A stretch of DNA of 64,000 nucleotides from the IMG/VR virus record IMGVR_UViG_3300035698_035366, positions 62,001 through 126,000 of that record; one strand, given 5' to 3'. The translations under genes and the position numbers were made by a program. The notes under the pieces are model-generated. The model was given only the letters and a program-made list of their open reading frames with translations. It made no database searches and was not told the origin of the DNA. Positions 6,765 to 63,426 of the stretch are shown in pieces (within the stretch, counting starts at the first letter, position 1; every line of letters starts with the position of its first letter).

Positions 6765-8324
6765 TTATTTTATAATCTTAAAAACTTCAAGCAAATCGAA
6801 CGGATCAATGTTTCTTTCGTTTGCAACAACAATAACCTTCTTAGCTTTATTAAGCCAGGTATTATGTGCATCTGATGGTGTCTCCCAAGAACCATAAAAC
6901 CAACTACATCCTTCAGCGTGATTATGATGGCATAGTGTTTCATGTAATTCCTCAGCGAGTCTACGATCATTGCTAAGTGCCATAAATCTTTGACGTTGTT
7001 TTTCACGTTTTTCTAATTCTTCGCGGAGATCTACAATCTCTCCTTCAATGCATTCTTCGATTGTCTCAAAACTTTGCGTAACCATTATCCTCTCCCACAA
7101 TTGTTATAATATCTCGAATCTTCTGTTGTAGAACTGTGATCTGTTGATCTCTCGATCTAATTTCTCTTTCATGATCTAAACGTGATACTGGCTCCAATTC
7201 TCTAATTCTAACAAACATTGGATTATTATAATCCTTTGCTTCTTTATCAGCCTTGGTTCTGGCAGATTTTTCATTCTTGGCATCAACGATAATATCAACA
7301 CTTTGATGGGGACCAACCTCATATATTGCCTCAAACTGTTTCATCTACCAATTACCTTCATAATGCCTTAATTTTTCTTCATCAGTAAAACCATCTCTTT
7401 GATCCACTCAATGCGTGACCCGATCTCTTACATGCAATCCAAAGCATATTCTTCTAACTCTTCAATATCTTGTCCCTTTGCCCATTTACAAAAAGCATGA
7501 AATTCATATTGTTTATAAAGTTTCGCAGCCTTGAATAACCCAAAGACTCGTTTCAATTGTAATTCCCTTTCAGGTAATGATAATTCTTTGCTCATTATCT
7601 TTACCACCTTAATCCAGCAGCACGTTCAGCAGATTCCAATTGTTCGGCGTCAGTAAACCCACCACCATCTCTTTGGGCGGCTTCTCGTGTCCAAGACGAT
7701 TCACTTGCTTCTTTCCGGTTCAATAGTTCTTTCATCCGATACATTTTCGTTGACAATTCCAGGACAAGAGAAATAAGTTCATCTTTTGATAACTTCTTTA
7801 ATTCCTCTAACGTTTTCATTTTATTTTACCTCACTATTATTATAACAATATTTTGTAAATTGTCAACATTTAATCACCGAAACCGCCATGGTAATAACTT
7901 TGTTTATCGTCTTGGACAAATGAATTTCCTAGTCGTTCGGCATATTCAGTATATATTTCTTCATCTGACCTTGCTGATAACCTTAGAATAGTCTTTGATT
8001 GCATCTCGATAATTGCAATCAATTCATCAACAGATTTTTCTTTCAATTCTTCTTTTTTCATATCTCTACCTCTTTAACCCAATTGTTGGCATCTTGCACA
8101 CATTCATCGTATGGAGTTGGTATATAACGGCTATTCTTTGAAGTCCACACTTGTCTACGCTTAGAACATACTGAACATTCTTGTCCGGTTAGGATACCGT
8201 ATCCATGAAATAGTTTCTTATCCACCCAATGACAATATCCGAGGTTATGGAGTTTCTTTCTAAAATATAGTCTTAATCTCGTTAACAAAGTTTTAATCCT
8301 TTGCCCAAAAACTCTTTGGCTCAT
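6765..8324 (-). CDS. Six small hypothetical ORFs (6765-7100, 7066-7344, 7428-7595, 7601-7819, 7870-8061, 8058-8324)
   Basis: Tightly packed, same strand; 7601-7819 and 7870-8061 share an MKxxELKxxSxDELI start. Confidence 0.55.
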
Positions 8325-47569: not shown

Positions 47570-47740
47570 ACTATCGTCCTAATGATGGATTCACTTATAC
47601 AATATTTAGCATCTTTTAAAAAATACACAGTTTTTATACTCGTCTGCTAAATACCAACGTATAATTTATGTGTATGATTGCATGAATAAAACAATTTGAA
47701 TAATATGCAATTTGCAAGAAACATTAAGGAGAGATATATA

Positions 47741-50700
47741 ATGGCACTCGTATCACCAGGCGTAGAAGTCACAGCAACCGATGAAAGTTTCTTTGCCAAC
47801 CCAGGGCAAGGAACAATTCCTTTCATTATGATTGCTACCGCTGAAGACAAGCCAAATCCAGGTAATCCAGCTTTAAATGCACCTGGTACAACACAAGCAA
47901 ACGCTGATAAACTTTTTCTTATCACTAGTCAAAGAGAACTAATCCAAACATTTGGTGAACCAACTTTTGCTCAGGTTCAAGGTACTCCACAACATGGTAA
48001 TGAGACAAACGAATACGGTTTATGGGCCGCGTATAGTTACATGGGGATTTCAAATCGCGCCTATGTTATGCGTGCTGATCTAAACTTGGATCAGTTGCAG
48101 CCAGAAGTTAATGAACCACGTAGTCAAGCACTAAATGGAACGTATTGGTTAGACACCGGAACAACAAATTTTGGTATTTTCCGATCAATCGGTTCCGATG
48201 GCAATCCCGCTACTTCCGCGTTTAATGATTGGTCTGTAAAAACACCATTTGTTGTAGATACGACTGCTGAAGCAAGCACACAACGAGTTTCATCTTTCTT
48301 CGTACCAACAATTGGCGACGCACTAATTGCCGGCGCCGGAGACCTAGTAATTAATGGTGTTACAATACCATTAGCTGGTGGTGAGGACCTAAGCAATGTT
48401 GGACTTGATAATGGTTTGGTTCAGATCATTAACAATGCTGTTATTCCAGGAATTGAAGCTTCAGTTTGGTGGTTTGGTCGCGGTTTAAAGTTGGTAATTA
48501 CAAATACAACGTCGGGATCAATTGATCTAACCGGCTCTGATTCTTCTATCCTAATTGATCTTGGTCTCGGCTCATCAGAGATTGTTCCTGACCGTGCATT
48601 ATTTGACGGAGAAACATTCTTTGCGGTTGTTACAATTGATTTTGAAAACAGAGTTTATGAGTGGATCACCCCAGTTGATGGAAATGGTGTTACTTTGGGA
48701 CCTGCTCAATGGTACCTAGTTGGTACTGATGGTTGGAGAAATGCTGTTCCTTCACAAGTTGAGGGAGATGGCACAGTTGTTACCGCAGCATCAACAATTT
48801 CAGTAACTTTTAGTTTATCAGGAAATACAACTTCAACCCAAACAGTTGTTGCAAGCGCGGCAACCGTCCCAGCGATGGTTGCAGATTTAACAACAGCATT
48901 CGCAACTGAAGTTGCTGATCAACAAGTTGAGTTCGCAGTTGGTGGATCAGGAAGTTTAGTAATTACAAACAATGACGGTGGTTCAATTACGGTATCAGGA
49001 CCACTTGCTGGTTCAACTCAATTGGATATGCCATCCCTAAAAGCTAAAGAGCTATTTTATGCTCCACATACGAACATTCCAGATAATAGTATCGAGGGTG
49101 ATGTTTGGATTAAGACAACTGAGCCAAACAATGGTGCAGATTATCAAGTGGCAATTTTTGATGATTCAATTGGACAGTTCGTTACAGTTAATGCCCCATT
49201 ATTTGCAGATGATACTGCCGCTCTTGCGGCACTGGGACCAAACCCAGCACCAGGTATCCTTTACGTTGAATTTGATGTAACAGATGAAGGTGTTGCTACC
49301 CACGTACTAAAACGTTCTAATGGTGTATCATTTGACCCATTGGTTTATGTGGCACAGGTTGCTGAGCCAACAAATGCTCCTCTAGAAGGAACATTATGGT
49401 ACAACACAAACTTTGATGTTGATATTATGGTAAGCACTGGTACTTCTTGGGTAGGTCTTAACAACCACCCATTCTATGCTAATGCTGATATTATTCTAAA
49501 TGCATCAAAACCAACACAGAAGCCAGTTGGATCACCAAATGGTGTTGCTCTTGTAGAGAATGACATCTGGATTGACACAAGTAATTTGGAGGATTATCCA
49601 ATAATCCGCCGTTATCGTGCAGCATCACAGAGTTTTGAACTAGTAGATAATACAGATCAAACAACACCGTTTGGTATTGTGTTTGCTGATGCCCGTCAAG
49701 ACGATGGTCTTGGTAATGAGGATTCAACCAGTCTTGCAAATAGCGATTTCGTTGATCCAGATGCACCAAATCCATTAACATTCCCTAATGGTTTCCTACT
49801 GTGGAATACACGCTTTAGCACATTGAATGTTAAGGAATGGCAACCAGATGCTCTTCTAGAATTTACAGAGGCAGAGCTTCTTGGAGCAAATGTTGTTCCA
49901 GCACAGTATGAAGTTGGTCTATCCGTATTCCCACCAATCCTTGATGGTGATCAGGGACGTTGGGTGACAATCAGTGGTAACCAGAATGATGGCGCGCCAA
50001 ATATGGCGCGTAATGCACAGAGAGCAATGGTTGTACGTCGAATGGCTGCATCAATTGCTGGAAATGAAGAACTTCGTGCAGAAACAGTGTTCTTCAATCT
50101 TATCGCTACACCAGGTTACCCAGAATTGATTGATGAAATGGTAACATTGAATTTTGATAAGAAGGAAATTGCGTTTATTATTGGTGATACACCAGCTAGA
50201 CTTGCTCCTTCAGGAACATCGATTCAGTCTTGGGCAACGAATGCAGAAAATGCACCAAGTAATGGTGAACTTGCACTAACAACCCGCGATACTAACGTTG
50301 GTATCTATTACCCATGGGGTCTAGGAACCAATATTGACGGGTTTGAGGTTATGGTACCACCATCAGCAATTGCACTAAGAACAATCGCGTTCAGTGATAG
50401 TGTTTCTTATCCATGGTTTGCACCCGCTGGTTTCTCCAGAGGTCGTGTTTCTAACGTGTCAAGTGTTGGTTTCTTGAACGCTGAAGAAGAATACAATCCA
50501 GTTATTCTTAATCAGGGACAACGAGATGTTCTTCAGCTTAATGACATCAATCCAATTGCATTCATGCCTAATCAGGGATTGGTTGTATTTGGACAGAAAA
50601 CACTTCATCCAGTTGACTCTGCTCTAGACAGGGTTAATGTTGTTCGATTGGTGAACTTCTTACGTTATAACTTTGATATTATTGCAAAACCATTCTTGTT

Positions 50701-50944
50701 CGAACCAAACGATCAGATTACTCGCGATTCAGTAACGTCAACATTTGAACGTTTCTTGGGTGATTTGGTTGGTCTAAGAGCACTTTTGGAGTTTGCGGTA
50801 GTCTGTGATTCGAGCAATAATACTCCAGAACGCATTGACAGGAACGAGTTGTGGATTGATATTGCCATCAAACCTGTGAAAAGTATAGAGTTTATTTTCA
50901 TTCCTATCCGCGTTCTAAACACAGGCGACGATTTAACAGCATAA
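47741..50944 (+). CDS. Tail sheath protein (gp18-like) with large insertion
   Basis: MALVSPGVEV, NEYGL.AAYSY, YYPWG, PWFAPAG..RG, INPI, GQKT..SALDRVNVVRL, IKPVKSIEFI. Confidence 0.95.
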   Translation: MALVSPGVEVTATDESFFANPGQGTIPFIMIATAEDKPNPGNPALNAPGTTQANADKLFLITSQRELIQTFGEPTFAQVQGTPQHGNETNEYGLWAAYSYMGISNRAYVMRADLNLDQLQPEVNEPRSQALNGTYWLDTGTTNFGIFRSIGSDGNPATSAFNDWSVKTPFVVDTTAEASTQRVSSFFVPTIGDALIAGAGDLVINGVTIPLAGGEDLSNVGLDNGLVQIINNAVIPGIEASVWWFGRGLKLVITNTTSGSIDLTGSDSSILIDLGLGSSEIVPDRALFDGETFFAVVTIDFENRVYEWITPVDGNGVTLGPAQWYLVGTDGWRNAVPSQVEGDGTVVTAASTISVTFSLSGNTTSTQTVVASAATVPAMVADLTTAFATEVADQQVEFAVGGSGSLVITNNDGGSITVSGPLAGSTQLDMPSLKAKELFYAPHTNIPDNSIEGDVWIKTTEPNNGADYQVAIFDDSIGQFVTVNAPLFADDTAALAALGPNPAPGILYVEFDVTDEGVATHVLKRSNGVSFDPLVYVAQVAEPTNAPLEGTLWYNTNFDVDIMVSTGTSWVGLNNHPFYANADIILNASKPTQKPVGSPNGVALVENDIWIDTSNLEDYPIIRRYRAASQSFELVDNTDQTTPFGIVFADARQDDGLGNEDSTSLANSDFVDPDAPNPLTFPNGFLLWNTRFSTLNVKEWQPDALLEFTEAELLGANVVPAQYEVGLSVFPPILDGDQGRWVTISGNQNDGAPNMARNAQRAMVVRRMAASIAGNEELRAETVFFNLIATPGYPELIDEMVTLNFDKKEIAFIIGDTPARLAPSGTSIQSWATNAENAPSNGELALTTRDTNVGIYYPWGLGTNIDGFEVMVPPSAIALRTIAFSDSVSYPWFAPAGFSRGRVSNVSSVGFLNAEEEYNPVILNQGQRDVLQLNDINPIAFMPNQGLVVFGQKTLHPVDSALDRVNVVRLVNFLRYNFDIIAKPFLFEPNDQITRDSVTSTFERFLGDLVGLRALLEFAVVCDSSNNTPERIDRNELWIDIAIKPVKSIEFIFIPIRVLNTGDDLTA

Positions 50945-51072: not shown

Positions 51073-52155
51073 ATGAGAATCGAGTCCGATGAAAAACTTG
51101 ACTTTTCCGATGTACTAATTCGTCCAAAACGAAGTGAATTAACTAGTCGGCGTGAAGTAAGCCTAGAGCGCACCTATAAATTTAAGCATTTACAAGACAT
51201 TGAATGGACTGGTATTCCTATCATAGCTACCAATATGGATACGGTTGGTACATTCGATATGGCTATTGCATTAAGTCGACATGGATTAATGACTGCTTTA
51301 CACAAGCATTATCAAATAAGCGACATTGCAGACTTTTTTAAGAATTATCCTAAAATGGAACAAAATAATATGTTCTATTCAATGGGAATATCAACCATGG
51401 ATCATGTTAAATTAAAGGAATTTTCCGAACTGCATCGTTTCCCAAAATTTATTTGCGTTGATGTTGCTAATGGCTATTCTGAAAAGTTTGTTCGGTTTAT
51501 TTCCAAACTCCGTGATGAAGTAGGTGACAAATCGGTTATAATGGCTGGAAATGTTGTTACTGGAGAAATGGTTGAAGAACTTATATTAGCTGGCGCTGAT
51601 ATAATTAAGGTGGGTATCGGCCCAGGATCCGTATGTACGACCCGTACAACAACTGGTGTAGGCTATCCGCAACTTTCTGCTATTATCGAATGTTCTGATG
51701 CAGCACATGGTCTTGGTGGTCTAGTTTGTGCCGACGGTGGATGTACCAATTCGGGAGACATAGCAAAAGCATTTGGTGCAGGTGCTGATTTTGTAATGCT
51801 AGGATCAATGTTCGCTGGTCATGATGAAAGTGGTGGTGAAATAGTTTATGAAACCTTTGCTGGAAAGGGTGGTTCAACCAAAATCCCAAAAAGTGTTAAA
51901 TTTTATGGCATGAGTTCATCCGAGGCAATGGATAAACATTCCGGAGGCGTAGCGGAATACAGAGCATCTGAAGGTAAATCAGTTTTGCTCCCATATCGAG
52001 GACCGGTTGAGAATACAGTTAAACAGATACTTGGTGGCATTAGATCAGCTTGCACCTACACGGGTGCCCATCAATTAAAAGAGCTAAGTAAACGCACAAC
52101 CTTTATTAAAGTTTCTGGAAAACAACAAGTCAATGAAATATATGGCAAGAGTTGA
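51073..52155 (+). CDS. guaC: GMP reductase
   Basis: [58 protein letters not shown]. Confidence 0.95.
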
Positions 52156-52418
52156 TGCCTAAAGTTGAAGATTTGACTCCATTGGAGCAAAATAGATTAT
52201 TGCACGGGCATGAGGTTTGGGATGGTCAATTTGTCACAATAGCCTTTAAATTAATGACTTCACCCCAGGTTGAAAAACAAAAAGATGATATTTTTGAATG
52301 GTTGGAAAATAATACTACTGGGAAATATAAGGTTGTAACCAACATTGGTCACAAACTGGTCGCGAAGATTGAAAAAGAACAAGATGTTATTATGTTTAAA
52401 TTAACATTTCAAATATAA
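52152..52418 (+). CDS. Hypothetical, motif family
   Basis: [15 protein letters not shown]. Confidence 0.6.
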
Positions 52419-52431
52419 AAAGGATACAATA

Positions 52432-54462
52432 ATGAGATTAAGCGAATTAAAGAAGATTGAAAAATTACCAAGTTTTACTATTGATCTTGATAATTTCGTC
52501 GAAAATGTAAAAACCAGTATTGATTCAATTAAAGAAACAGTTGATGATATCGCTAATAGTAATGAACCAATAACATGGGAATCATTTGATAAGTTATCAC
52601 TAATAGAAGAAAAATACGGTGATCTCATAGAATTGGCTGCTCACCTAAAAGGCGTTAGGGATGAACCACGTCTCAGAGAAGTTTGGGAAGAGATCATTCC
52701 AATAGCGGATGATTTTGGGAACTGGATGCGCTTCCACCGACGATTTGCTGATAGGCTTACAGAACTACGCGATTCCGGAACGCTAAATGATGAACAACAG
52801 TATATTACGGATGAAGCAGTTAAAAGCTACGAACGTAGCGGATTACTACTTGATGGTGAGCCAAAGAAACGCTTTTCTCAAATATCGTTGCGTTCCAGTG
52901 AACTAGTAAATAATTTCAATAAAAATCTTTTGGATGGAACAAAGGCTTGGTCCTTAAATATAACCGATGAATCGGAATTAGCTGGTGTACCAGAATCCGA
53001 TATGGAAGCCCTAGCTGATATGGCTGAAAGCCGTGGAGAGAAGGGTTGGACAATTACACTTGATTATCCATTATATTCTCCAATTATGGAATATTGCCAA
53101 AATAGGGAACTTCGAAGAATTTGTTCCAAGGCAATGATTACAAAATGCTCAGAATTGGCAGACGATACTAGTTTTGATAACACATCAATTATTAATGAAT
53201 TGATCAAACTTAAAGAAGAATCAGCAAAAATATTAGGGATGAAAACACCAGCCCATTTAAGTGTTGCTAGTAAAATGGTTGAATCACCTGAACAAGTTAT
53301 TGAATTCCTGCGAGATTTAATAGTCAGAACAAAACCACAGGCTGAAAAGGAATTATTCGAGCTCGAAGAGTTCGCCGGGAAAAATGGTCTAGACGGAAAA
53401 ATGCAACCATGGGATAGGGGCTTTTATGCTGAAAAAATGCTACAAAAGAACTTCAAGGTTGATTCAGAAAAGATCCGACAATATTTTATTCTTGATAATG
53501 TTATTGATGGTTTGTTTGGTCTAGTATCACGCCTATATGACATTGAAATCAAAGACGAAACTGATTTAATTGATGATAAATGGGATGACAAGGTTCGATT
53601 CTATCGCCTATACAGAGATGGTGAACATTTTGCTTCGGTATATGCAGACTTTTTTGCTGATTCGAAACGCAAGCGCGGTGGTGCCTGGATGAATGACCCA
53701 GTAACTCGCTGGACCAAACCAGACAAAATTACACAATTACCGGTTGCATATATGGTGATGAATTTCCCATCAGCTACAAAAACTCGTCCAAGTCTTCTAA
53801 CACATAATGACATTGAGACATTGTTCCACGAATTTGGTCACGCCTTGCATCACATGATGACAGAGGTCATCTACAAAGACGCCTCCGGTATACGAGGAGT
53901 TGAATGGGATGCCGTTGAATTACCAAGCCAGCTTATGGAAAACTGGTGCTGGAATGAAGATATTGTACGATCAATGTCATCTCATTGGAAAACTAAAAGA
54001 AAGCTACCAAAGTCACAATTTAAGAATATGCTTGCCGCGAAGAACTTTATGAGTGGTATGGGATTGCTTCGTCAGACAGAAATGGCATTGTTTGATTTCC
54101 TTTTGCATTACGATAGAAAACCAGATGAAACAATTCTTGATGTTCTTACACGTACCCGAGAAGAAACAAAAATATCAGAACCGCTTGAATATGACCGCTT
54201 CCCAAATGGGTTTAGTCATATTTTTGGTGGAGGATACTCGGCGGGATATTTCAGTTATCTTTGGTCTGAGGTTTTAAGTTCTGACACATTCGCCGCCTTT
54301 GAAGAAACTGGTGACGTTTTTAATCCATCAATTGCGGAAAAATTCCGTAAGGAATTATTATCAAAGGGTGGTACAAATAGTATGAGTGAATTATATAGGA
54401 ATTTTAGGGGTCGAGACGTAATATTAGAACCATTCCTTAAAAATCGAGGTATATCCACTTAG
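52432..54462 (+). CDS. prlC: Oligopeptidase A (M3 metallopeptidase)
   Basis: KRGGAWM, LFHEFGHALHH, VEWDAVELPSQLMENW, HIFGGGYSAGYFSY.WSE. Confidence 0.93.
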   Translation: MRLSELKKIEKLPSFTIDLDNFVENVKTSIDSIKETVDDIANSNEPITWESFDKLSLIEEKYGDLIELAAHLKGVRDEPRLREVWEEIIPIADDFGNWMRFHRRFADRLTELRDSGTLNDEQQYITDEAVKSYERSGLLLDGEPKKRFSQISLRSSELVNNFNKNLLDGTKAWSLNITDESELAGVPESDMEALADMAESRGEKGWTITLDYPLYSPIMEYCQNRELRRICSKAMITKCSELADDTSFDNTSIINELIKLKEESAKILGMKTPAHLSVASKMVESPEQVIEFLRDLIVRTKPQAEKELFELEEFAGKNGLDGKMQPWDRGFYAEKMLQKNFKVDSEKIRQYFILDNVIDGLFGLVSRLYDIEIKDETDLIDDKWDDKVRFYRLYRDGEHFASVYADFFADSKRKRGGAWMNDPVTRWTKPDKITQLPVAYMVMNFPSATKTRPSLLTHNDIETLFHEFGHALHHMMTEVIYKDASGIRGVEWDAVELPSQLMENWCWNEDIVRSMSSHWKTKRKLPKSQFKNMLAAKNFMSGMGLLRQTEMALFDFLLHYDRKPDETILDVLTRTREETKISEPLEYDRFPNGFSHIFGGGYSAGYFSYLWSEVLSSDTFAAFEETGDVFNPSIAEKFRKELLSKGGTNSMSELYRNFRGRDVILEPFLKNRGIST

Positions 54463-55509: not shown

Positions 55510-55511
55510 TA

Positions 55512-55540
55512 TTGATATCGATATATAATGATGTTAGTAT
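55512..55540 (+). promoter_or_regulatory. Promoter for the non-coding RNA
   Basis: TTGATA-N17-TAGTAT with extended TG. Confidence 0.6.
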
Positions 55541-55550
55541 ATAAAATATA

Positions 55551-55892
55551 AACAGTGGGCAGCAATGTCCTGAACCCATAAACTCTATGTTGGTGACTGG
55601 GATGCCTAGTTCATGGCGTAATGATAGCGGGGGTGACAACCTCGAATATAGAGATCAATGGAATGAACCATTAACTGTTTAAGTGATAACGTAATGTTAT
55701 TACACGGGACATGGAATAGGAATGATAGCGGATGCCCGTACCGCCTTGCAAAGGTCAGCTGCCTTTGTTTGTATAGTTCATACGAGATAATTACTTAGAC
55801 CAATATCAGTCGGGTAATTATCAAGAGACTGGCAATGGATCTTCGATGATCTGTTAAAATTGAAAGCATGATATGCCGGCATTCCTATTCCA
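55551..55892 (+). ncRNA. Unclassified ~340-nt pseudoknotted RNA
   Basis: Stems 55558-63/55758-63, 55565-72/55705-12, 55713-24/55880-91 (12 bp perfect), 55786-94/55814-22; no ORF. Confidence 0.65.
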
Positions 55893-55958
55893 GATCGAAA
55901 AAAGATATTGCAAATATCATTCGCTTATATTATACTACTTAAATAATAAGGAGAAACG

Positions 55959-56114
55959 ATGTTTATTTTTACAATTGCTTGGAGCCAAACAGACCGAGAC
56001 GTTATCGCAGTTGAAGCAAAGACGCGAGACGAAGCTTATGAGAAGATGGTAAAAAGGATTGGAAATAGCTTTAACATCGTTGACACAAGGGAGGTTACAA
56101 AAATAATAGAATAA
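55959..56114 (+). CDS. 51-aa hypothetical
   Basis: RBS TAAGGAG; MFIFTIAWSQTDRDVIAVEAKTRDEAYEKM.. Confidence 0.6.
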   Translation: MFIFTIAWSQTDRDVIAVEAKTRDEAYEKMVKRIGNSFNIVDTREVTKIIE

Positions 56115-56147
56115 TAGAATAATAGAATAATAGAATAATAGAATAAT
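56102..56147 (+). repeat. Tandem 8-mer (AATAATAG) x5.75
   Basis: Direct reading. Confidence 0.95.
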
Positions 56148-56371
56148 TTTTAAAAAACGAACATTTTTTTATTGTTTTAGTACGAAAATTATAGTATATT
56201 ATAAATAACAATGAGGCAGGAGCGTAGGAGCAACAAAAACCTCACATAAATTAAATTATTTAGATCGAAGTCGTAGCTGGAGGTAACGTTACCAGTGAAA
56301 GCGGAAGGGCGGTATACCGCGTCCGATAAGATGAGCCTAAGTCGCAGAACGGAACTGGCACGGATACAGAT

Positions 56372-56438
56372 CGAAGAGCCGAATGCAAACGGTTATCATT
56401 TGGATTGAAACTGTCGTTTGTAAATAACTTGTTCTTCG
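56372..56438 (+). ncRNA. Y-RNA-like unit 1
   Basis: CGAAGAGC[C]GA..GGTTATC..TAACTTGTTCTTCG; 8-bp stem with bulged C. Confidence 0.65.
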
Positions 56439-56444
56439 TAGATC

Positions 56445-56511
56445 GATTGAGCCGAAGGGTAGTTGGTTATCTCTTATTGAAAGAACGTGTTGCAGCACAT
56501 TAACTTGCATC
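56445..56511 (+). ncRNA. Y-RNA-like unit 2
   Basis: GAGC[C]GAAGGGTAGTTGGTTATCTC..TAACTTGC; an alternative pairing with 56511-18 is possible. Confidence 0.6.
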
Positions 56512-57216
56512 CAACCCCAATCCTTGCTCATGATAATTGGTTTCCAATTTCCATAAAAAATTGGTGGTGGAGGCAGCATATAAGGATTAATCCTATTATG
56601 ATACCGCCCCAGGTTTCCAACTTCCTTAAAGAGTTGGTGGCGGATAAAAGTTTTAAGGTAGTGTAATTACCATATGACTCCTCCAAAAGCGGGAAAGAAA
56701 TTTCCCGCTGGATCGAGGCTCTAATAATAACAGGAGCAAGGCGCAGTAGAAAAACCACTCGGTATGTTTATGGGTAAGCTGCATAGACTATAAACGATTA
56801 TACAGATTTGATGCCTGATTCAGCTAAGAAGGCATCTCACGGTGGTGGTGCTGAAACCGCATGATCGTGGGGGTATTCGAGTAAAGCTCGGTACATTTTG
56901 TGGAGGAAGGCTGATTGTGGCACCGACGGAAATCTAGGGTCACCTGTTCTTCAAGGGAGGAGGCACCACAAAGATCGACCTAAATTAGTTTTACTTAGTT
57001 AAACTAAGTTGGGTTGACTTGTTTAGCGATGTATTTGTTGGCTGAAAGCCAATAAAGGTGATTATCCACTGGATAGGTAAGAGGTATACACCTTGGGGCT
57101 ATACATGGCGTTAAATGATGCGTGTAAGGGCGAGCACTGAGTTCAGAGTGCATAGGAAATAAACGGAAGTCGGGAAGCAGTAAGCCTTACGGTAGTCGCT
57201 TCCAAGTCCTAAGATC

Positions 57217-57280
57217 GAAGAGCCGAAGAAATATGGTTATCTTGCAATGATGAACCCCATATTTCATTAACTTGCTCTTT
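57217..57280 (+). ncRNA. Y-RNA-like unit 3
   Basis: GAAGAGC[C]GA..GGTTATC..TAACTTGCTCTTT. Confidence 0.65.
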
Positions 57281-57291
57281 TAATTTTGATC

Positions 57292-57362
57292 GGGGCCGTA
57301 GTATGTGGGTTATCTTACATTCAGAAAACAGTTTCTTGCAGTAAGACCGCTAACACTATCGC
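57292..57362 (+). ncRNA. Y-RNA-like unit 4 (divergent)
   Basis: GGGC[C]GTAGTATGTGGGTTATC; TCTTAC/GTAAGA stem. Confidence 0.5.
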
Positions 57363-57450
57363 AATTACTGATTAGTAATCAATTTATTGGTGAAAATCGG
57401 TTTTCGGATGTTTAATATGGATCACTTAGAATGATTTCAATTAAGTTAAA

Positions 57451-57488
57451 CTAGCCGAAGTCCATGTACACTATTTGCCCTTTGTTAG
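57451..57488 (+). ncRNA. Minimal Y-like bulged-C hairpin
   Basis: CTAGC[C]GAAG pairs with CTTTGTTAG. Confidence 0.4.
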
Positions 57489-58184
57489 CTGGAAGTCATG
57501 ATCCAGCGAAAGACGATAGATGCGGGAATATGGAAGCAAGAGCGTCTTTATTAGAAAGAACTGGCGATATCCAGGGACGTTTGATAGGGATTTTCAAATA
57601 GCCAAAATGGTTATCGAGGAGTCAAATTCCGGTCCGGAATATCTGGAAAGACGTTGATACGATAACTAATCAATTAGCCAGGGCCTACCCGGCGCTTGGT
57701 TTAGAGGGGTTGGTGTAGAACACCTTCCCCTCCTTAATTGAAGTTAATTGAAGATGAATACAGAAGAATAGAACAATTTTTGAAAAACTTGAAAAAAGTT
57801 GTTGCTATTCATAAAAAACAGTGTTAGTATAACGTCTCATATAGTAACTTACAGTAAGAGAGGAATACTAAATGGAAATTTTTAGTAGATAGATTTTATT
57901 TTTAGAGAACTTATTTTTTACTTAGAAAAGTATAGTATGATAGTCGGCCGCGCACCTTGAAATAACCGGCATTTCCTTATTATCCGAAAATGCGTGACAG
58001 GATTTTAAGGGTAGAAAACAAAAATGTTTTTTACTTATGATAGATAAATTTTAATGGGCTTGTATTCTATTAGATAGAAGTTACAAACTCTATAATAGTA
58101 GAACATTAAGGGTAACGGTAGTGGCCACTACCGTTACTCTAGATCGGAGCATAAATTGGAGCATTTAAACAGGAGGGCATAACC

Positions 58185-59819
58185 ATGTCTAGCTTTAACA
58201 GTCTACGTAACACTAATAATTCGCGCCAGAACGCGGCAACCCCACAGTCACAGCCAATTCCAGGCCGTGAAGAGGAGATGGTCGAGAACAACGCAGGTGG
58301 TTTCACCTTCACCGTCGATCTATGGGACCGTCTTGACCGTTTCCTAATCCTTGGAGTTGAGGGTGGAACATACTACGTTTCAGAAAAGAAGCTCGCAGTT
58401 GACAACGCCAAAAACGTTGTTAAGGCAATTGAGCAGGACGGCCTACGGGTTGTTCAGAGAATTGTTGAAATTAGCGACTCTGGCCGAGCAGCAAAGAACG
58501 ATCCAGCATTGTTTGCTCTAGCACTAGCAGCTAGTGCAGATAATCCGCAGACTCGTCAGGCAGCACTTGTGGCTTTGCCACAGGTAGCTCGTATCGGTAC
58601 ACATCTTTTCCACTTTGCGGATTTCGTACAGAATTTCCGTGGTTGGGGCCGCGCACTTCGCCGGGCAATTGGTGATTGGTATACGAAGCAGGATGTCAGT
58701 AATCTAGCCTATCAGGCAGTTAAGTACCGCCAGCGTGATGGTTGGACCCACCGCGACTTACTCCGTTTGAGTCACCCAAAGACTCGCAACGAATCACGTA
58801 ACGATGTTTTCAAGTGGATTGTAACGGGTAAGAACGTTTCCGATGTTCCAGTTATCGCTGGATTTGAACAGGCACAAACGGCAACTTCACCAAAAGAAAT
58901 TGTACGCTTGATTAACGAATTCAATCTTCCACGTGAGGCAATTCCAACAGAGTTCCTTAACGACGTTAATGTATGGGATGCGCTTCTCCAGAAGATGCCT
59001 TTGCACGCAATGATTCGAAACCTTGGTAAGATGAGCAGCATTGGTCTACTTGCACCAATGAGTAATGCCCAGAACCTGGTTGTTAATAAGCTTTCTAACG
59101 CGGAGGATCTCCGTAGAAGCCGTGTACATCCAATGGCTGTTTTGACAGCTTTGTACACGTACAAGAGTGGTCACGGTATCCGTGGTAGCCTTTCTTGGGA
59201 CGTTAACTCTCAGGTGATGGATGCATTGGACGAATCGTTCTATGGAACTTTCCAGAACGTTGAGCCAACTGGTAAGCCAACTATGCTCGCTCTTGATGTT
59301 TCAGGAAGCATGTCAATGGACAACATTGGTGGCGTCCCAGGACTCACACCGCGTGTTGCTAGTGCTGCGATGGCTATGATTACGGCCCGCACTGAGCCAA
59401 ACTATATGGTTACTGCTTTTACCGGTGGTGGAAGCTGGGGACGTAGTGGTAATGTTGATAATTTGACAGTTCTTGATATCACTCCCCGCCAGCGTATGGA
59501 CGATGTAATTCGGAAGGTAAGTGGCCTTTCATTTGGTGGGACGGATTGTGCATTACCAATGATTTATGCCGATAAGAAGAATTTGGCTATTGACAACTTT
59601 GCGGTTTATACTGATAACGAAACATGGGCGGGTTCGATTCAGCCATCCCAGTCTTTGGTAAATTACCGTAAGAAGAGTGGTCGTGGAGCTCGTCTCGCAG
59701 TGGTGGGAATGACGTCAACGGATTTCACTATCGCTGATCCAAAGGATGCTGGTATGATGGACGTGGTTGGATTCGATTCAGCGGCTCCAGCAATTATGGC
59801 CAACTTCTTTCGAGGTTAA
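58185..59819 (+). CDS. rsr: Ro60 RNA-binding protein (TROVE + vWA)
   Basis: NNAGGF, RLDRFLILG.EGGTYY, AVKYRQRDGWTHRDLLRLSHP, MIRNLGKM, LALDVSGSM, GGTDCALP, TDNETW. Confidence 0.96.
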   Translation: MSSFNSLRNTNNSRQNAATPQSQPIPGREEEMVENNAGGFTFTVDLWDRLDRFLILGVEGGTYYVSEKKLAVDNAKNVVKAIEQDGLRVVQRIVEISDSGRAAKNDPALFALALAASADNPQTRQAALVALPQVARIGTHLFHFADFVQNFRGWGRALRRAIGDWYTKQDVSNLAYQAVKYRQRDGWTHRDLLRLSHPKTRNESRNDVFKWIVTGKNVSDVPVIAGFEQAQTATSPKEIVRLINEFNLPREAIPTEFLNDVNVWDALLQKMPLHAMIRNLGKMSSIGLLAPMSNAQNLVVNKLSNAEDLRRSRVHPMAVLTALYTYKSGHGIRGSLSWDVNSQVMDALDESFYGTFQNVEPTGKPTMLALDVSGSMSMDNIGGVPGLTPRVASAAMAMITARTEPNYMVTAFTGGGSWGRSGNVDNLTVLDITPRQRMDDVIRKVSGLSFGGTDCALPMIYADKKNLAIDNFAVYTDNETWAGSIQPSQSLVNYRKKSGRGARLAVVGMTSTDFTIADPKDAGMMDVVGFDSAAPAIMANFFRG

Positions 59820-61302: not shown

Positions 61303-61890
61303 ATGGTGGAAACGTTAAATAAATTCGGAGTTCCGGTAGACGGTGAAAGAGCTGGTATGCTTATGCCAAAGCTCACAAACCGCTTTCGCGTTCGTCTAAC
61401 AAATTTCGGCCCGCTTAATTCGGCACAATCAGTAGATCTATCACGTCAGGTTATATCGGTTGCAAAGCCAAACTTAACACATGAAGAAGTTATGGTTCAT
61501 AGTTATAACTCAATTGCTTACTTTGCTGGTAAACATGCATGGCAAACTGTTGATCTAGTAGCACGTGATGACATCACAAACGCTGTAACGCGCCTTGTGT
61601 ATCATCAGGTACAGAAACAGATGAACCACTTTGAACAGACTAGCCCAATTGCTGGTTCTAACTACAAATTCGGTATGGTTGTTGAAACACTAGACGGTGG
61701 AAACGATGGTGTGTTGGAAAAATGGGAACTGGAAGGTTGCTTCCTAACTAATATTGCTACGGAAGGTCTAAATTATGAATCTGCAAATGCGCAGACCATT
61801 ACGATGACAATTCGTTACGATAACGCAACACTACAGGATGGTCTACAGACACAGACACCAGAGCTTCTAACAGGATTGACGAGAGTTTAA
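61303..61890 (+). CDS. Tail tube protein (gp19-like)
   Basis: PKL.NRFRV, AGKH.WQ, WELEGCF, ITMTIRYDNA; GCTAAATA at 61244. Confidence 0.88.
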   Translation: MVETLNKFGVPVDGERAGMLMPKLTNRFRVRLTNFGPLNSAQSVDLSRQVISVAKPNLTHEEVMVHSYNSIAYFAGKHAWQTVDLVARDDITNAVTRLVYHQVQKQMNHFEQTSPIAGSNYKFGMVVETLDGGNDGVLEKWELEGCFLTNIATEGLNYESANAQTITMTIRYDNATLQDGLQTQTPELLTGLTRV

Positions 61891-61911
61891 TTTAATCCTG
61901 GAGGAATTCTA

Positions 61912-63426
61912 ATGCCTTTAGTTAATGATTTACTGTCTTTTGCTTTTAGTGGACAAAATCCGTTTGAAGATAGGATGCTACGTGATAGTAGACATGCACG
62001 TCACCGCTTTGAAACAAGAGATGCACAAACAGAACAAGATTTTGGTGGACGACCAAAACCAAAATTCCTGTTTGGTGTGCGATTCATAACTCAGTTCAAT
62101 TCACCGGCCTTTGGACAATTTTCTGACCAAAATGGCGACGTCGCTTTTATGGTTAAAACTGTTGATAAACCAAAAATTGATTTTGACGTCACAGTTATGA
62201 ATCAATATAATAAGCGTAGATTAGTTCAAACAAAAATAAAATATCAACCAATTAATATGCGTTTTTATGATTCAGTAGATGAAAGACTATCAAAATTTAT
62301 ATTATCATACATGCAGCATTACTATGGTGATCATTTAGCAGAAAATGTTGATCAATGGAGTTATGATAAAATTTCTTCAGAATTCAATAATGGTGTAGAT
62401 GGTTGGGGTTACAGAGGTATTTCCCAACCAGGCCGCTCAAATTCTGCCCCTTTCATGTCACATATTGAACTTTATCAATTCTTTGGTGGTAATTTTTCTC
62501 GTTGGGTTTTTGTTAACCCATTGATTACTAGCTTTGATCATGATAATGTTGATGCAGAATCGGGCAATGTTGCACAAGAAGCAAGTATGTCAGTCGAATT
62601 TGAAGGACTTCTTTATAGAGAAAAAAATATCCCATTAGCAACATCTAAAGTTGGTCGCGCAGCAATTGATTTCTTCAAGCTAGAAGAGTTCGCTGATAAT
62701 TTAGAATTACCTGATGCACTACAAATCGGCGGTTTAAATCTCGGTGGTATTAGTGATCTTGCATCGGCTAGATCAGTTTTTGGTCGAGAACTTGGTAGGA
62801 AAACAATCGAAGTTTTGAGCGGTAGCCCAATCGATACATCAGGCATTTCTAGAACATCATCATCGGCATTAACACCGTTTGGTAACTTTGATTTTGGTTC
62901 AGTTATTGTTGGTGAAGGTGTTGATGGATTAATTAGTAGCGGTGTAAGTGGATCGACAGGTGCGGTTTCAAACGCCATTAGAGCTGGTACTGCAAACGTT
63001 GCACGTGATGCTCTTAACTTGGTTAGAGGTAATATTCTTGGAACAGGTGGTACTCGACTCAATGACGGCGCTGCCTCGTTTTGTGCTGACCCAGCAACAG
63101 GATCTGGGACTTCACCGTCCGCATCCCCGGCAGGTGCCGCCAAAGCTGTTGGTCAAACAGGTGGGTTTTCCACACCAGGAGTAGCAGCAGATGAAAATTC
63201 AGCAGTTGTACAGTTTGCAGGAGCGGTGACAACTGGTGTTGATACAGTGGTCAAAGGGGTTGGTGATGGTTTACAGTTTGGATTAGAGACCATCGGGCTT
63301 AGAAATTCCCAATCTACTACAGGAAACCAAATTGGAGTAACAGCTAAACCATTTGTTGACCCAGATTCATTAACGCCTTCACAACGGGCTATTCGGGCAC
63401 AAAACCAATTTCCGGATAACACCTGA
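61912..63426 (+). CDS. Baseplate tail-tube cap/initiator (gp48/gp54-like)
   Basis: VKTVDKPKI, NQYNKRRLVQTKIKYQPI.MRFYDS; follows tube gene. Confidence 0.6.
   Translation: MPLVNDLLSFAFSGQNPFEDRMLRDSRHARHRFETRDAQTEQDFGGRPKPKFLFGVRFITQFNSPAFGQFSDQNGDVAFMVKTVDKPKIDFDVTVMNQYNKRRLVQTKIKYQPINMRFYDSVDERLSKFILSYMQHYYGDHLAENVDQWSYDKISSEFNNGVDGWGYRGISQPGRSNSAPFMSHIELYQFFGGNFSRWVFVNPLITSFDHDNVDAESGNVAQEASMSVEFEGLLYREKNIPLATSKVGRAAIDFFKLEEFADNLELPDALQIGGLNLGGISDLASARSVFGRELGRKTIEVLSGSPIDTSGISRTSSSALTPFGNFDFGSVIVGEGVDGLISSGVSGSTGAVSNAIRAGTANVARDALNLVRGNILGTGGTRLNDGAASFCADPATGSGTSPSASPAGAAKAVGQTGGFSTPGVAADENSAVVQFAGAVTTGVDTVVKGVGDGLQFGLETIGLRNSQSTTGNQIGVTAKPFVDPDSLTPSQRAIRAQNQFPDNT

What the first reader, a model, noticed from the sequence alone, without database searches (positions are those of the whole stretch)
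55551..55892. ~340-nt unclassified RNA with a long-range pseudoknot
It has its own promoter and no ORF. GGCAGC/GCTGCC encloses an 8-bp stem with several hairpins, and a perfect 12-bp helix (55713-24/55880-91) crosses it. There is a further 9-bp hairpin, and the RNA ends exactly at a GATCG. The topology loosely recalls RNase P P2/P4, but the conserved CR-I/CR-V sequences are absent.
Basis: partly seen in the sequence, partly recalled or inferred. Interest (0 to 1): 0.68.

Follow-up and report, generated by a model that had tools for sequence, protein, structure and literature searches.

The report
New phage RNA family beside Ro60

Summary
The window is part of a 296-kb jumbo myovirus record from a salt-lake metagenome. 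Positions 55548-55892 (+) start a 2.7-kb ORF-poor RNA island that ends at a Ro60/TROVE gene.

The region is modular:
- **Module A (55548-55685):** a full-length member of a conserved phage RNA family. A covariance model built without this window scores it at 91 bits, E 1e-18. I confirmed 73 distinct members in IMG/VR contigs and one in the cultured Sinorhizobium phage Phosso. None was found among 100 pattern hits in bacterial genomes, and Rfam 15 has no match.
- **Spacer:** an 8-bp hairpin (55683-55703).
- **Module B (55712-55892):** a lineage-specific domain closed by a 13-bp helix, followed by a recurrent AGAUCGA junction motif.

The family fold is P0-P5 plus a 4-bp H-type pseudoknot, CCYA/URGG. 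That pseudoknot is 100% paired, with C-G swapping to U-A in 27 versus 46 sequences.

Family members lie in phage tRNA arrays on the tRNA strand, next to Ro60 with Y-RNA-like units, or just upstream of a PolA gene.

Function is unknown. My best guess is a stable trans-acting small RNA that is cut out of polycistronic small-RNA transcripts.

The parts
55512..55540 (+). Sigma-70-like promoter (TTGATA, 17 nt, TAGTAT, with TG upstream of the -10). The predicted start lies about 55547-55549, at the foot of P0.
   Evidence: L005 has TTGCGA-17-TATAAT at the equivalent position just before its P0. Inferred, not shown by transcripts.
55548..55685 (+). Module A: full-length member of the conserved phage RNA family (P0-P5 plus pseudoknot).
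   Evidence: Model R2, built from 64 members without the window or L005, scores 91.3 bits, E 1.4e-18, covering model positions 1-141 of 141. R1 scores 96.9 bits.
55550..55680 (+). P0 closing stem, 7 bp: AAACAGU (55550-56) with ACUGUUU (55674-80).
   Evidence: Sequence. The P0 columns covary in the family: 5 of 5 pairs show compensatory changes.
55557..55570 (+). P1 hairpin, GGGCA-GCAA-UGUCC.
   Evidence: Relatives have GNRA or UUCG loops, and 4 of 5 pairs show compensatory changes.
55575..55578 (+). Pseudoknot 5' arm, CCCA, inside the near-invariant junction UGAACCCAUAA.
55583..55591 (+). P2 5' strand, CUCUAUGUU. It pairs with 55645-55653.
   Evidence: 9 of 9 pairs are compensatory and 95% of cells are paired. 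These are the top MI pairs.
55598..55601 (+). Pseudoknot 3' arm, UGGG, inside the conserved GGUGACUGGGAUG.
   Evidence: 100% paired in 73 distinct sequences. The third pair is U-A in 46 and C-G in 27, and one sequence has A-U changed to C-G at the fourth pair.
55602..55619 (+). P3 hairpin.
   Evidence: 6 of 6 pairs show compensatory changes.
55619..55626 (+). Conserved junction UAAUGAUA (family consensus UAANGRUA).
   Evidence: Column counts are 65-72 of 73. This junction was not imposed by the search pattern.
55628..55644 (+). P4 hairpin.
   Evidence: 4 of 4 pairs show compensatory changes.
55645..55653 (+). P2 3' strand, AAUAUAGAG.
55657..55672 (+). P5 hairpin, AAUGG-AAUGAA-CCAUU, one base from the P0 3' strand. 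P5 (5 bp) plus P0 (7 bp) has the dimensions of a tRNA T-arm/acceptor minihelix.
   Evidence: 5 of 5 pairs compensatory. P5 is optional in some subfamilies. In L098 the loop is UUCAAUU, a T-loop.
55683..55703 (+). 8-bp spacer hairpin between the two modules.
   Evidence: L005 and other jumbo-phage relatives also have a hairpin directly after P0.
55712..55892 (+). Module B: a lineage-specific domain closed by a 13-bp helix (55712-24/55880-92), containing five hairpins.
   Evidence: MFE -62 kcal/mol, z -4.1; inverted repeat I8. The only comparative support is L005. It has a sequence-unrelated domain with a roughly 9-bp long-range helix, and in both the 3' arm is preceded by CCGGCA.
55892..55898 (+). 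AGAUCGA junction motif at the 3' end of the unit.
   Evidence: GATCGA occurs 7 times on the + strand in 55510-58184 and 0 times as its reverse complement, against 13 times in the other 61 kb. Each copy examined by eye follows a closing helix or hairpin by 0-3 nt, and the motif recurs at equivalent places in L005.
56369..56535 (+). Context: two Y-RNA-like units (56369-56440 and 56441-about 56535).
   Evidence: Alignment A8. Units of the same family in L112 give full-length sub-threshold matches to Rfam Y_RNA and nematode sbRNA.
57213..57400 (+). Context: two more Y-RNA-like units (57213-57287, and 57288 to about 57400 with an uncertain 3' end).
58185..59819 (+). Context: Ro60/TROVE (Rsr-like) gene that closes the RNA island.
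   Evidence: Pfam TROVE plus vWA_Ro60 and PHROG 850. 48% identical to the Ro-like protein of phage Phosso by tblastn.

Best explanation
Positions 55548-55892 are the first unit of a polycistronic small-RNA island (55510-58184) in a jumbo phage. The unit is transcribed rightwards from a sigma-70-like promoter at 55512-55540.

**Anatomy**
- Module A (55548-55685) belongs to a widespread, phage-specific structured RNA family that matches nothing in Rfam 15.
- Its fold is a closing stem P0, hairpin P1, a 9-bp stem P2 capped by a junction with hairpins P3 and P4, and a 4-bp H-type pseudoknot (CCYA with URGG) that crosses P2. An optional hairpin P5 stacks on P0.
- About 30 junction nucleotides are nearly invariant: YUGAACCYAUAA, GGNGACURGGRUG and UAANGRUA.
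- Module B (55712-55892) is a lineage-specific add-on closed by a 13-bp helix.
- The unit ends at AGAUCGA. This strand-specific motif separates successive RNA modules in this phage and in its relative L005, so it is probably a processing or boundary signal.

**Most likely mode of action (inferred, roughly 0.3-0.35)**
- Module A is a stable, trans-acting small RNA.
- P0, with P5 where present, gives it a tRNA acceptor/T-arm-like minihelix. That would let the enzymes that mature tRNAs excise it from tRNA-array or small-RNA transcripts.
- The pseudoknotted junction would then be the working surface that binds a factor conserved across many bacterial hosts, most plausibly a component of tRNA/RNA metabolism or surveillance. 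This fits its habitual neighbours: tRNAs, tmRNA, Y RNAs and Ro60.

**Shown versus inferred**
- Shown: family membership, the fold, the pseudoknot, phage specificity and the genomic associations.
- Inferred: transcript ends, processing, trans action and the binding partner.
For: **Membership**
- R2, built without the window, gives 91.3 bits, E 1.4e-18, full length.

**Family size and spread**
- 74 model-confirmed hits (73 distinct sequences) with GC from 0.34 to 0.67; the 50 records checked span contigs of 11-465 kb.
- One copy in cultured phage Phosso and one in this genome.

**Structure**
- 89% of cells are paired against 57% in shuffles, and the covariation score is 0.73 against 0.19.
- P2 shows compensatory changes at 9 of 9 pairs, and the pseudoknot is 100% paired with two covarying positions.
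- The 22 best MI-APC column pairs are all predicted pairs, the pseudoknot included.

**Phage specificity**
- 60 of the first 100 pattern-hit viral loci searched with the model were confirmed (further ones), against 0 of 100 in bacterial genome contigs.

**Not a gene-specific leader**
- Flanking genes are heterogeneous: tail tube and sheath, PolA, Ro60, HNH, ParB.

**Link to tRNA genes**
- 29 of 72 members have a same-strand tRNA within 2 kb, none has an opposite-strand one, and 14 have one within 30 nt.
- L098 has a 7-bp acceptor-like stem, a D-arm-like hairpin and a UUCAAUU T-loop.

**Link to Ro60**
- TROVE is present in 8 of 50 motif-bearing records, from at least three lineages. In the loci where I mapped it (L005, L112, L172) it lies within a few kb of the motif.
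- Y-like units occur in four of those Ro60-bearing loci: window, L005, L112 and L172.

**Strand and boundaries**
- Fold z is -3.8 on the + strand and -1.2 on the - strand.
- A promoter sits at the same place in L005.
- GATCGA is strand-biased and enriched in the island.
Against: - **No transcript data.** The only public runs holding this DNA are salt-lake DNA metagenomes, and the laid contigs were identical fragments. The start, the end and even expression are therefore inferred.
- **Ascertainment bias.** Most members were collected with a pattern that fixes GAACCYATA and GGNGAYTRGG, so conservation of those two blocks is inflated. The Y/R covariation and all helices were not imposed.
- **Variable tRNA mimicry.** P5 is missing in some subfamilies, and P1 is a plain tetraloop hairpin in the jumbo-phage group.
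- **A possible cis role.** A GC-rich subfamily sits 15-30 nt upstream of PolA start codons. In some jumbo phages the RNA lies about 100-250 nt upstream of the tail-tube gene.
- **Module B has weak comparative support.** Only one distant analogue exists, and its 13-bp helix is not beyond chance on its own.
- **No partner is known.**
Confidence: 0.6

Rival explanations
1. Self-cleaving ribozyme or other RNA-processing element. The conserved pseudoknotted junction would catalyse or direct a cut that separates neighbouring RNAs (tRNAs, Y RNAs, mRNA) in polycistronic phage transcripts.
For: - The context is phage-only, abutting tRNAs at 3-10 nt.
- A sub-threshold RAGATH-18 match lies about 60 nt away in L098; by my knowledge that motif class is associated with ribozyme-rich loci.
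- About 30 near-invariant junction nucleotides plus a pseudoknot are typical of small ribozymes.
- Some members sit right before a start codon.
Against: - Rfam reports no match to any known self-cleaving class.
- The helix order does not fit the HDV-like nested double pseudoknot.
- tRNA arrays already have RNase P and RNase Z for processing.
- A closing stem that joins both ends is more typical of stable RNAs.
- No cleavage data exist.
Confidence: 0.15
2. Ro60 partner. Module A, or the whole 345-nt unit, would be a tRNA-like Y RNA analogue (like YrlA) that tethers the phage Ro60 to a tRNA-recognising enzyme.
For: - It sits at the head of the Y-RNA-like array upstream of Ro60 here and in L005.
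- TROVE is present in 8 of 50 motif-bearing records from at least three lineages, against 356 of 50,697 phage records overall.
- YrlA RNAs are tRNA-like and lie next to Ro60 (PMC4201824).
Against: - 11 of 14 near-complete motif-bearing genomes lack TROVE.
- Atu_ph07 has Ro60 but no copy of the motif.
- Module A lacks the GRGCCGRAG...CUUGYCC helix that marks the neighbouring Y-like units.
- Its topology differs from YrlA: the ends lie at the acceptor-like stem, not at a Ro60-binding stem.
- The co-location may simply reflect clustering of RNA genes in islands.
Confidence: 0.15
3. Cis-regulatory leader (riboswitch, protein-binding operator or antiterminator) that controls the genes downstream on the same strand.
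For: - Five GC-rich members lie 15-30 nt upstream of a family-A DNA polymerase ORF.
- In L029, L031 and L044 the RNA is followed by a terminator and then the tail-tube gene.
- Here it starts the transcript that leads towards Ro60.
Against: - There is no consistent downstream gene.
- Many members sit inside tRNA arrays, at the start, in the middle or at the end of them.
- No alternative pairing sequesters a ribosome-binding site or a terminator.
- The closing stem P0 seals the fold.
Confidence: 0.08
4. One reading: a single 340-nt RNA whose GGCAGC/GCTGCC helix is crossed by the 12-bp helix, with an RNase P-like topology.
For: Both complementary pairs exist in the sequence, and the whole stretch is strongly structured.
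Against: - GGCAGC is part of the conserved, covarying hairpin P1.
- GCTGCC is in a local 8-bp hairpin.
- The minimum-energy and centroid folds do not use the pairing.
- L005 has no equivalent.
- There is no RNase P hit.
Confidence: 0.02

Closest known systems
Phage T4 species 1 and species 2 RNAs (rnaC, rnaD)
   Same: Small stable RNAs of unknown function encoded inside a phage tRNA cluster on the tRNA strand. They have a tRNA-like acceptor/T-arm end that lets tRNA-processing enzymes mature them (annotation, sequence; the processing is from my own knowledge of the T4 literature).
   Different: There is no sequence or structural similarity. T4 lacks the conserved junctions, and models R1 and R2 find nothing in T4.
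Bacterial and phage Y RNAs (YrlA/YrlB, Yrn1) bound by Ro60/Rsr
   Same: Non-coding RNAs next to Ro60, some with tRNA-like modules and processed from a common precursor (PMC4201824). This locus does carry Y-RNA-like units next to Ro60.
   Different: Module A lacks the bulged Ro60-binding helix, has a different topology, and is mostly found in phages without Ro60.
Bacterial RNase P RNA
   Same: A structured RNA with long-range pairings, linked to tRNA biology.
   Different: There is no Rfam RNase P hit and no CR-I/CR-V. The conserved part is only about 135 nt, and the pseudoknot is a 4-bp H-type, not P4/P6.
tmRNA
   Same: A tRNA-like acceptor/T-arm combined with pseudoknots. tmRNA genes occur in the same phage tRNA arrays.
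   Different: There is no reading frame for a tag peptide. ARAGORN and Rfam do not call it, apart from a 7-bit T-arm fragment. It is 130-150 nt long, against more than 300 nt for tmRNA.
GOLLD and ROOL RNAs; HDV-like ribozymes next to phage tRNAs
   Same: Phage-borne structured RNAs that cluster with tRNA genes (from my own knowledge; PMC12286853 was listed).
   Different: There are no Rfam hits to these families. The size and helix order differ.

Membership tests
The phage RNA family defined here (models R1 and R2) | Full-length match to a covariance model built without the query | tested here: met
   R2 gives 91.3 bits, E 1.4e-18, model positions 1-141 of 141 at 55548-55685.
The phage RNA family defined here (models R1 and R2) | Pseudoknot CCYA/URGG across P2, plus the conserved junctions UGAACCYAUAA, GGNGACURGG and UAANGRUA | tested here: met
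   The window has CCCA (55575-78) with UGGG (55598-601), and the junctions UGAACCCAUAA, GGUGACUGGG and UAAUGAUA. The pair columns covary in the family.
RNase P RNA | Match to an Rfam RNase P model; CR-I (GAGGAAAGUCC) and CR-V forming P4 | tested here: not met
   No RNase P family appears at gathering score or at E up to 10. The CR-I string is absent from 55548-55892.
tRNA / tmRNA | Cloverleaf with an anticodon arm (tRNA); tRNA-like domain plus a tag reading frame (tmRNA) | tested here: not met
   ARAGORN finds no gene in the window and Rfam gives no hit. P0 and P5 mimic only the acceptor/T-arm minihelix.
Y RNA / YrlA | Terminal stem with the conserved bulged Ro60-binding helix (GGNCCGAAG ... 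CUUGNCC) | tested here: not met
   The helix is absent from 55548-55892 but present in the neighbouring units at 56369, 56441, 57213 and 57288. Rfam Y_RNA gives no hit on the finding.
Y RNA / YrlA | Physical binding to Ro60 | not testable with these tools
   This needs immunoprecipitation or a binding assay.
Known self-cleaving ribozyme classes (hammerhead, twister, twister-sister, pistol, hatchet, HDV-like, glmS) | Match to the family model and its characteristic helix order | tested here: not met
   No such Rfam hit on the window or on six related loci. Whether the RNA cleaves itself was not testable.
T4 rnaC / rnaD | Sequence or structure similarity to the T4 species 1 and 2 RNAs | tested here: not met
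   T4 lacks the conserved junctions, and R1 and R2 find nothing in T4.

The most novel reading that the evidence does not exclude
Module A would define a new class of phage-specific functional RNA with an activity of its own. It could be a new self-cleaving ribozyme class. It could equally be a tRNA-shaped decoy or sponge that protects the phage's tRNA/RNA pool, for example against host tRNA-targeting nucleases or RNA-surveillance factors, and that works alongside Ro60 and Y RNAs where these are present.
Probability: 0.3. Interest if true: 0.9.

Novelty: categorically new. Interest (0 to 1): 0.74.

Why it matters
Phage tRNA arrays and Ro60/Y-RNA loci are under active study as counter-defence and RNA-repair modules, yet the small RNAs that travel with them are poorly known. 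T4's species 1 and 2 RNAs, for example, have to my knowledge gone unexplained since the 1970s.

- **What is new.** This is a compact RNA of about 135 nt with a proven pseudoknot and about 30 near-invariant junction nucleotides. It is conserved across phages with GC content from 34 to 67% and genomes from 41 to 465 kb, and it was not found in the bacterial genomes sampled.
- **What that implies.** Such conservation points to a specific molecular activity against a target shared by many hosts.
- **It is testable.** The RNA is present in a cultured phage (Sinorhizobium phage Phosso), so its function can be examined directly.
- **A second result.** The same window shows tandem arrays of Y-RNA-like units whose Ro60-binding helix closely resembles that of animal Y RNAs. 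This broadens the picture of viral Ro60 ribonucleoproteins.

Tried and rejected
- **Rfam 15.** Gathering and permissive scans of the window, the finding and seven related loci found only wcaG RNA at 56536-56651 and chance-level hits.
- **blastn against 50,697 phage records.** No match for the finding or for an array-type member.
- **Single-protein Ro60 scan of IMG/VR.** Nothing. A tail-tube alignment was needed to reach relatives.
- **T4 rnaC/rnaD.** Not related.
- **Transcript evidence.** No RNA runs hold the DNA. Laying four DNA runs gave only identical contig pieces and no variants to test module B.
- **Bacterial genomes.** 100 pattern hits, none confirmed by the model.
- **RtcB.** Absent from this phage record.
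- **Cultured relatives of the PolA-linked and array-linked subfamilies.** None close enough.
- **Literature.** Four full-text searches and four papers read or searched gave no description of the motif, and no paper holds its conserved strings. The supplement of the IMG/VR structured-RNA catalogue (PMC10690425) is not held, so I could not check whether the motif is among its 8,495 unnamed candidates.
- **Ideas dropped:**
  - CsrA-binding site: ACUAGGAUG resembles the SELEX consensus, but its GG is paired in the pseudoknot.
  - Processive antiterminator: members sit at the start, in the middle or at the end of tRNA arrays.
  - Extra tertiary pairs: the MI analysis found none beyond the model.
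  - Homology of module B to L005: the alignment is weak.

Full report
**Setting**

The window is bases 62001-126000 of a 296-kb IMG/VR virus record. The DNA occurs in salt-lake metagenomes. The genes are those of a jumbo myovirus: a tail sheath at 47696-50944 and tail tube genes at 61303-63426. The nearest cultured relatives are Sinorhizobium phage Phosso and Agrobacterium phage Atu_ph07, which share the order sheath - insert - Ro60 - tail tube.

The finding lies at the left end of a 2.7-kb stretch (55510-58184) with no ORF over 80 aa. That stretch ends at a Ro60/TROVE gene at 58185-59819. The phage's 34 tRNA genes lie elsewhere, at 244.8-279 kb of the record, all on the + strand.

**Checking the observation**

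- The + strand of 55551-55895 folds at -107 kcal/mol, with z -3.8 and no shuffle as good. The - strand gives z -1.2.
- The perfect long-range helix is real and 13 bp long: 55712-24 with 55880-92.
- The window holds four such long-range perfect repeats of 12 nt or more, so this helix is not significant by itself.
- A promoter-like site, TTGATA-17-TAGTAT, precedes the RNA. The closest relative, L005, has TTGCGA-17-TATAAT at the same spot.
- The GGCAGC/GCTGCC helix is not supported, for the reasons given below.

**What the 5' half is**

A blastn/nhmmer comparison of the ORF-poor stretch with loci fetched through a tail-tube alignment showed that window positions about 55560-55700 are conserved in distant jumbo-phage contigs. 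The shared features suggested a simple pattern, GAACCYATA-N5-25-GGNGAYTRGG.

- **First model (R1).** A covariance model built from 14 sequences confirmed 20 loci among the tail-tube set. Four of these do not fit the pattern, and one is an unannotated gap in phage Phosso. Among the pattern-hit loci, R1 confirmed 60 of the first 100 searched, and a few more in a later search.
- **Second model (R2).** Built from 64 members without the window and L005, R2 finds window 55548-55685 at 91.3 bits, E 1.4e-18, end to end.
- **Absences.** Rfam 15 has no match for the window member or for seven related loci. Of 100 pattern hits in bacterial genome contigs, none is a model hit. No paper in the library holds the conserved strings.
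- **Copy number.** The family is single-copy in this genome and in Phosso, and absent from Atu_ph07 and T4.

**The fold**

On the 73 distinct sequences of alignment A6, 89% of cells are paired, against 57% in shuffles and 33-42% when partners are slid by 1-3 columns. The covariation score is 0.73 against 0.19.

| Helix | Pairs with compensatory changes |
|---|---|
| P0 | 5 of 5 |
| P1 | 4 of 5 |
| P2 | 9 of 9 |
| P3 | 6 of 6 |
| P4 | 4 of 4 |
| P5 | 5 of 5 |

- The pseudoknot CCYA/URGG is paired in every sequence. Its third pair is U-A in 46 sequences and C-G in 27, with no mismatch or wobble. One sequence changes the fourth pair from A-U to C-G.
- The collecting pattern allowed all four Y/R combinations, and the model does not encode the pseudoknot, so this correlation was not imposed.
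- An unsupervised MI-APC scan ranks 22 predicted pairs, including the pseudoknot pair, above every other column pair.
- In the window the helices are: P0 55550-56/55674-80, P1 55557-61/55566-70, pseudoknot 55575-78/55598-601, P2 55583-91/55645-53, P3 55602-19, P4 55628-44 and P5 55657-72.
- **Caveat.** The invariance of GAACCYAUA and GGNGAYURGG is inflated by the pattern. The junction UAANGRUA (65-72 of 73) was not imposed.

**Where family members live**

- **tRNA arrays.** 29 of 72 members have a same-strand tRNA within 2 kb, none has an opposite-strand one, and 14 lie within 30 nt of a tRNA, often 3-10 nt away, like one more tRNA in the row. Some of these arrays also carry tmRNA. In this group P0 is often 7 bp and P5 5-6 bp. 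L098 has a D-arm-like P1 and a UUCAAUU loop in P5.
- **Next to Ro60.** TROVE occurs in 8 of 50 motif-bearing records, from the jumbo lineage and from two unrelated phages of 105 and 149 kb. In the loci where I mapped it (L005, L112, L172) it lies within a few kb of the motif.
- **Upstream of PolA.** Five GC-rich members lie 15-30 nt upstream of a family-A DNA polymerase ORF.
- Flanking genes are otherwise heterogeneous. This pattern fits a self-contained RNA gene that rides in RNA islands better than a leader for one gene family.

**The 3' half and the boundary**

Module B (55712-55892) folds into five hairpins closed by the 13-bp helix, with z -4.1. L005 has, after its own spacer hairpin, a sequence-unrelated multi-hairpin domain with a roughly 9-bp long-range helix. 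In both phages the 3' arm follows CCGGCA. That is suggestive, but it rests on two sequences.

An 11-nt string, AAUGAUAGCGG, occurs in both modules (55620-30 and 55721-31). This hints at a partial duplication.

The unit ends at AGAUCGA. GATCGA occurs 7 times on the + strand of the island and never as its reverse complement, against 13 times in the other 61 kb. Each copy I examined follows a closing helix or hairpin by 0-3 nt, and AGATCG recurs at the equivalent module ends in L005, including just before Ro60. I read it as a boundary or processing signal. Elsewhere in the genome many GATCGA copies lie between a Shine-Dalgarno sequence and the start codon, so the motif may have more than one meaning.

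**The rest of the island**

At 56369, 56441, 57213 and 57288 there are units with the signature GRGCCGRAG - stem - GGUUAUC - loop - stem - CUUGYC. The same units occur in L005, as three tandem copies in L112, and in L172; all four of these loci carry Ro60. Other Ro60-bearing jumbo loci did not match this pattern.

An L112 unit gives full-length but sub-threshold matches to Rfam Y_RNA (23.8 bits, E 0.009) and to nematode stem-bulge RNA (28.6 bits, E 4e-4). These are Y-RNA-like genes, as expected next to Ro60 (PMC4201824). A wcaG RNA (56536-56651, 56 bits) is embedded in the same array.

**Interpretation**

- **Shown:** a real, conserved, pseudoknotted RNA family, specific to phages as far as sampled, of which the window holds one full member at the head of a Ro60/Y-RNA island.
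- **Inferred:** the transcript starts at P0, the unit ends at AGAUCGA, and the RNA is a stable trans-acting molecule excised like a tRNA. Its junction would bind a factor conserved among hosts.
- **Rivals not excluded:** a new self-cleaving ribozyme, a Ro60 partner, or a cis-acting leader. Each is given with its odds in the rival explanations.

**Novelty**

No Rfam family, no annotated feature in Phosso and no paper found covers this RNA. It may still be one of the thousands of unnamed candidates in the IMG/VR structured-RNA catalogue (PMC10690425), which I could not check. I rate it as a new RNA class of unknown function. The closest concept is T4's unexplained species 1 and 2 RNAs.

Noticed in passing
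window 56369-56440, 56441-56535, 57213-57287, 57288-~57400; also L005:6219-7192, L112:8908-9126, L172:7618-7918 (-): Arrays of roughly 70-95-nt Y-RNA-like units (GRGCCGRAG ... GGUUAUC ... CUUGYC) next to phage Ro60 genes. By my recollection of the human Y1 sequence (not checked with a tool), their 5' part is nearly identical to its GGUCCGAAGGUAGUGAGUUAUC. Rfam Y_RNA and nematode sbRNA match only below threshold.
   Followed up: partly
window 55892, 56262, 56368, 56440, 56710, 56972, 57212, 58141; L005:6087-7465; genome 240.9-277 kb: A strand-specific (A)GAUCG(A) motif follows closing helices at the ends of successive RNA modules in this phage and in L005. Elsewhere in the genome it often sits between a Shine-Dalgarno sequence and the ATG. 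Its meaning (processing site, extended anti-SD pairing, or other) is unexplained.
   Followed up: partly
window 56536-56651 (+): A wcaG RNA (Rfam RF01761, 56 bits) lies inside the Ro60-associated RNA array, directly after a Y-like unit and far from any ORF start. This does not fit its Rfam label as a cis-regulatory element.
   Followed up: no
window 55908-56114 (+): A second promoter-like site (TTGCAA-17-TATACT) and a 51-aa ORF with a strong ribosome-binding site are inserted between the first RNA unit and the rest of the array. L005 lacks this insert. The ORF's end overlaps a short tandem repeat (AATAG/AATAATAG units, about 56104-56140).
   Followed up: no
window 56160-56216; L005:6109-6182: A 75-nt block, 79% identical between the two phages, contains AGTATATTATAAATAACA. 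It is probably a conserved promoter for the Y-RNA array.
   Followed up: no
window 51073-54462 (+): An IMPDH/GMP-reductase-family gene and an M3 oligopeptidase gene sit between the tail sheath and the RNA island. Phosso and Atu_ph07 have only small hypothetical genes there. These are possible auxiliary metabolic genes.
   Followed up: no
L163:5845-8614, L150:2581-5391, L128:23-2693, L129:64-2671 (-), L152:7073-9698: A GC-rich subfamily of the RNA lies 15-30 nt upstream of a divergent 820-886-aa family-A DNA polymerase. One of these polymerases carries a DnaJ domain.
   Followed up: partly
L098:11157-11224 (-): A sub-threshold RAGATH-18 match (27 bits, E 0.0075) lies about 60 nt upstream of the family member in a phage tRNA array.
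   Followed up: no
window 7688-7700 / 7906-7918: Another perfect 13-nt inverted repeat with arms 205 nt apart. I used it only as a chance comparison for the 13-bp helix and did not examine it.
   Followed up: no
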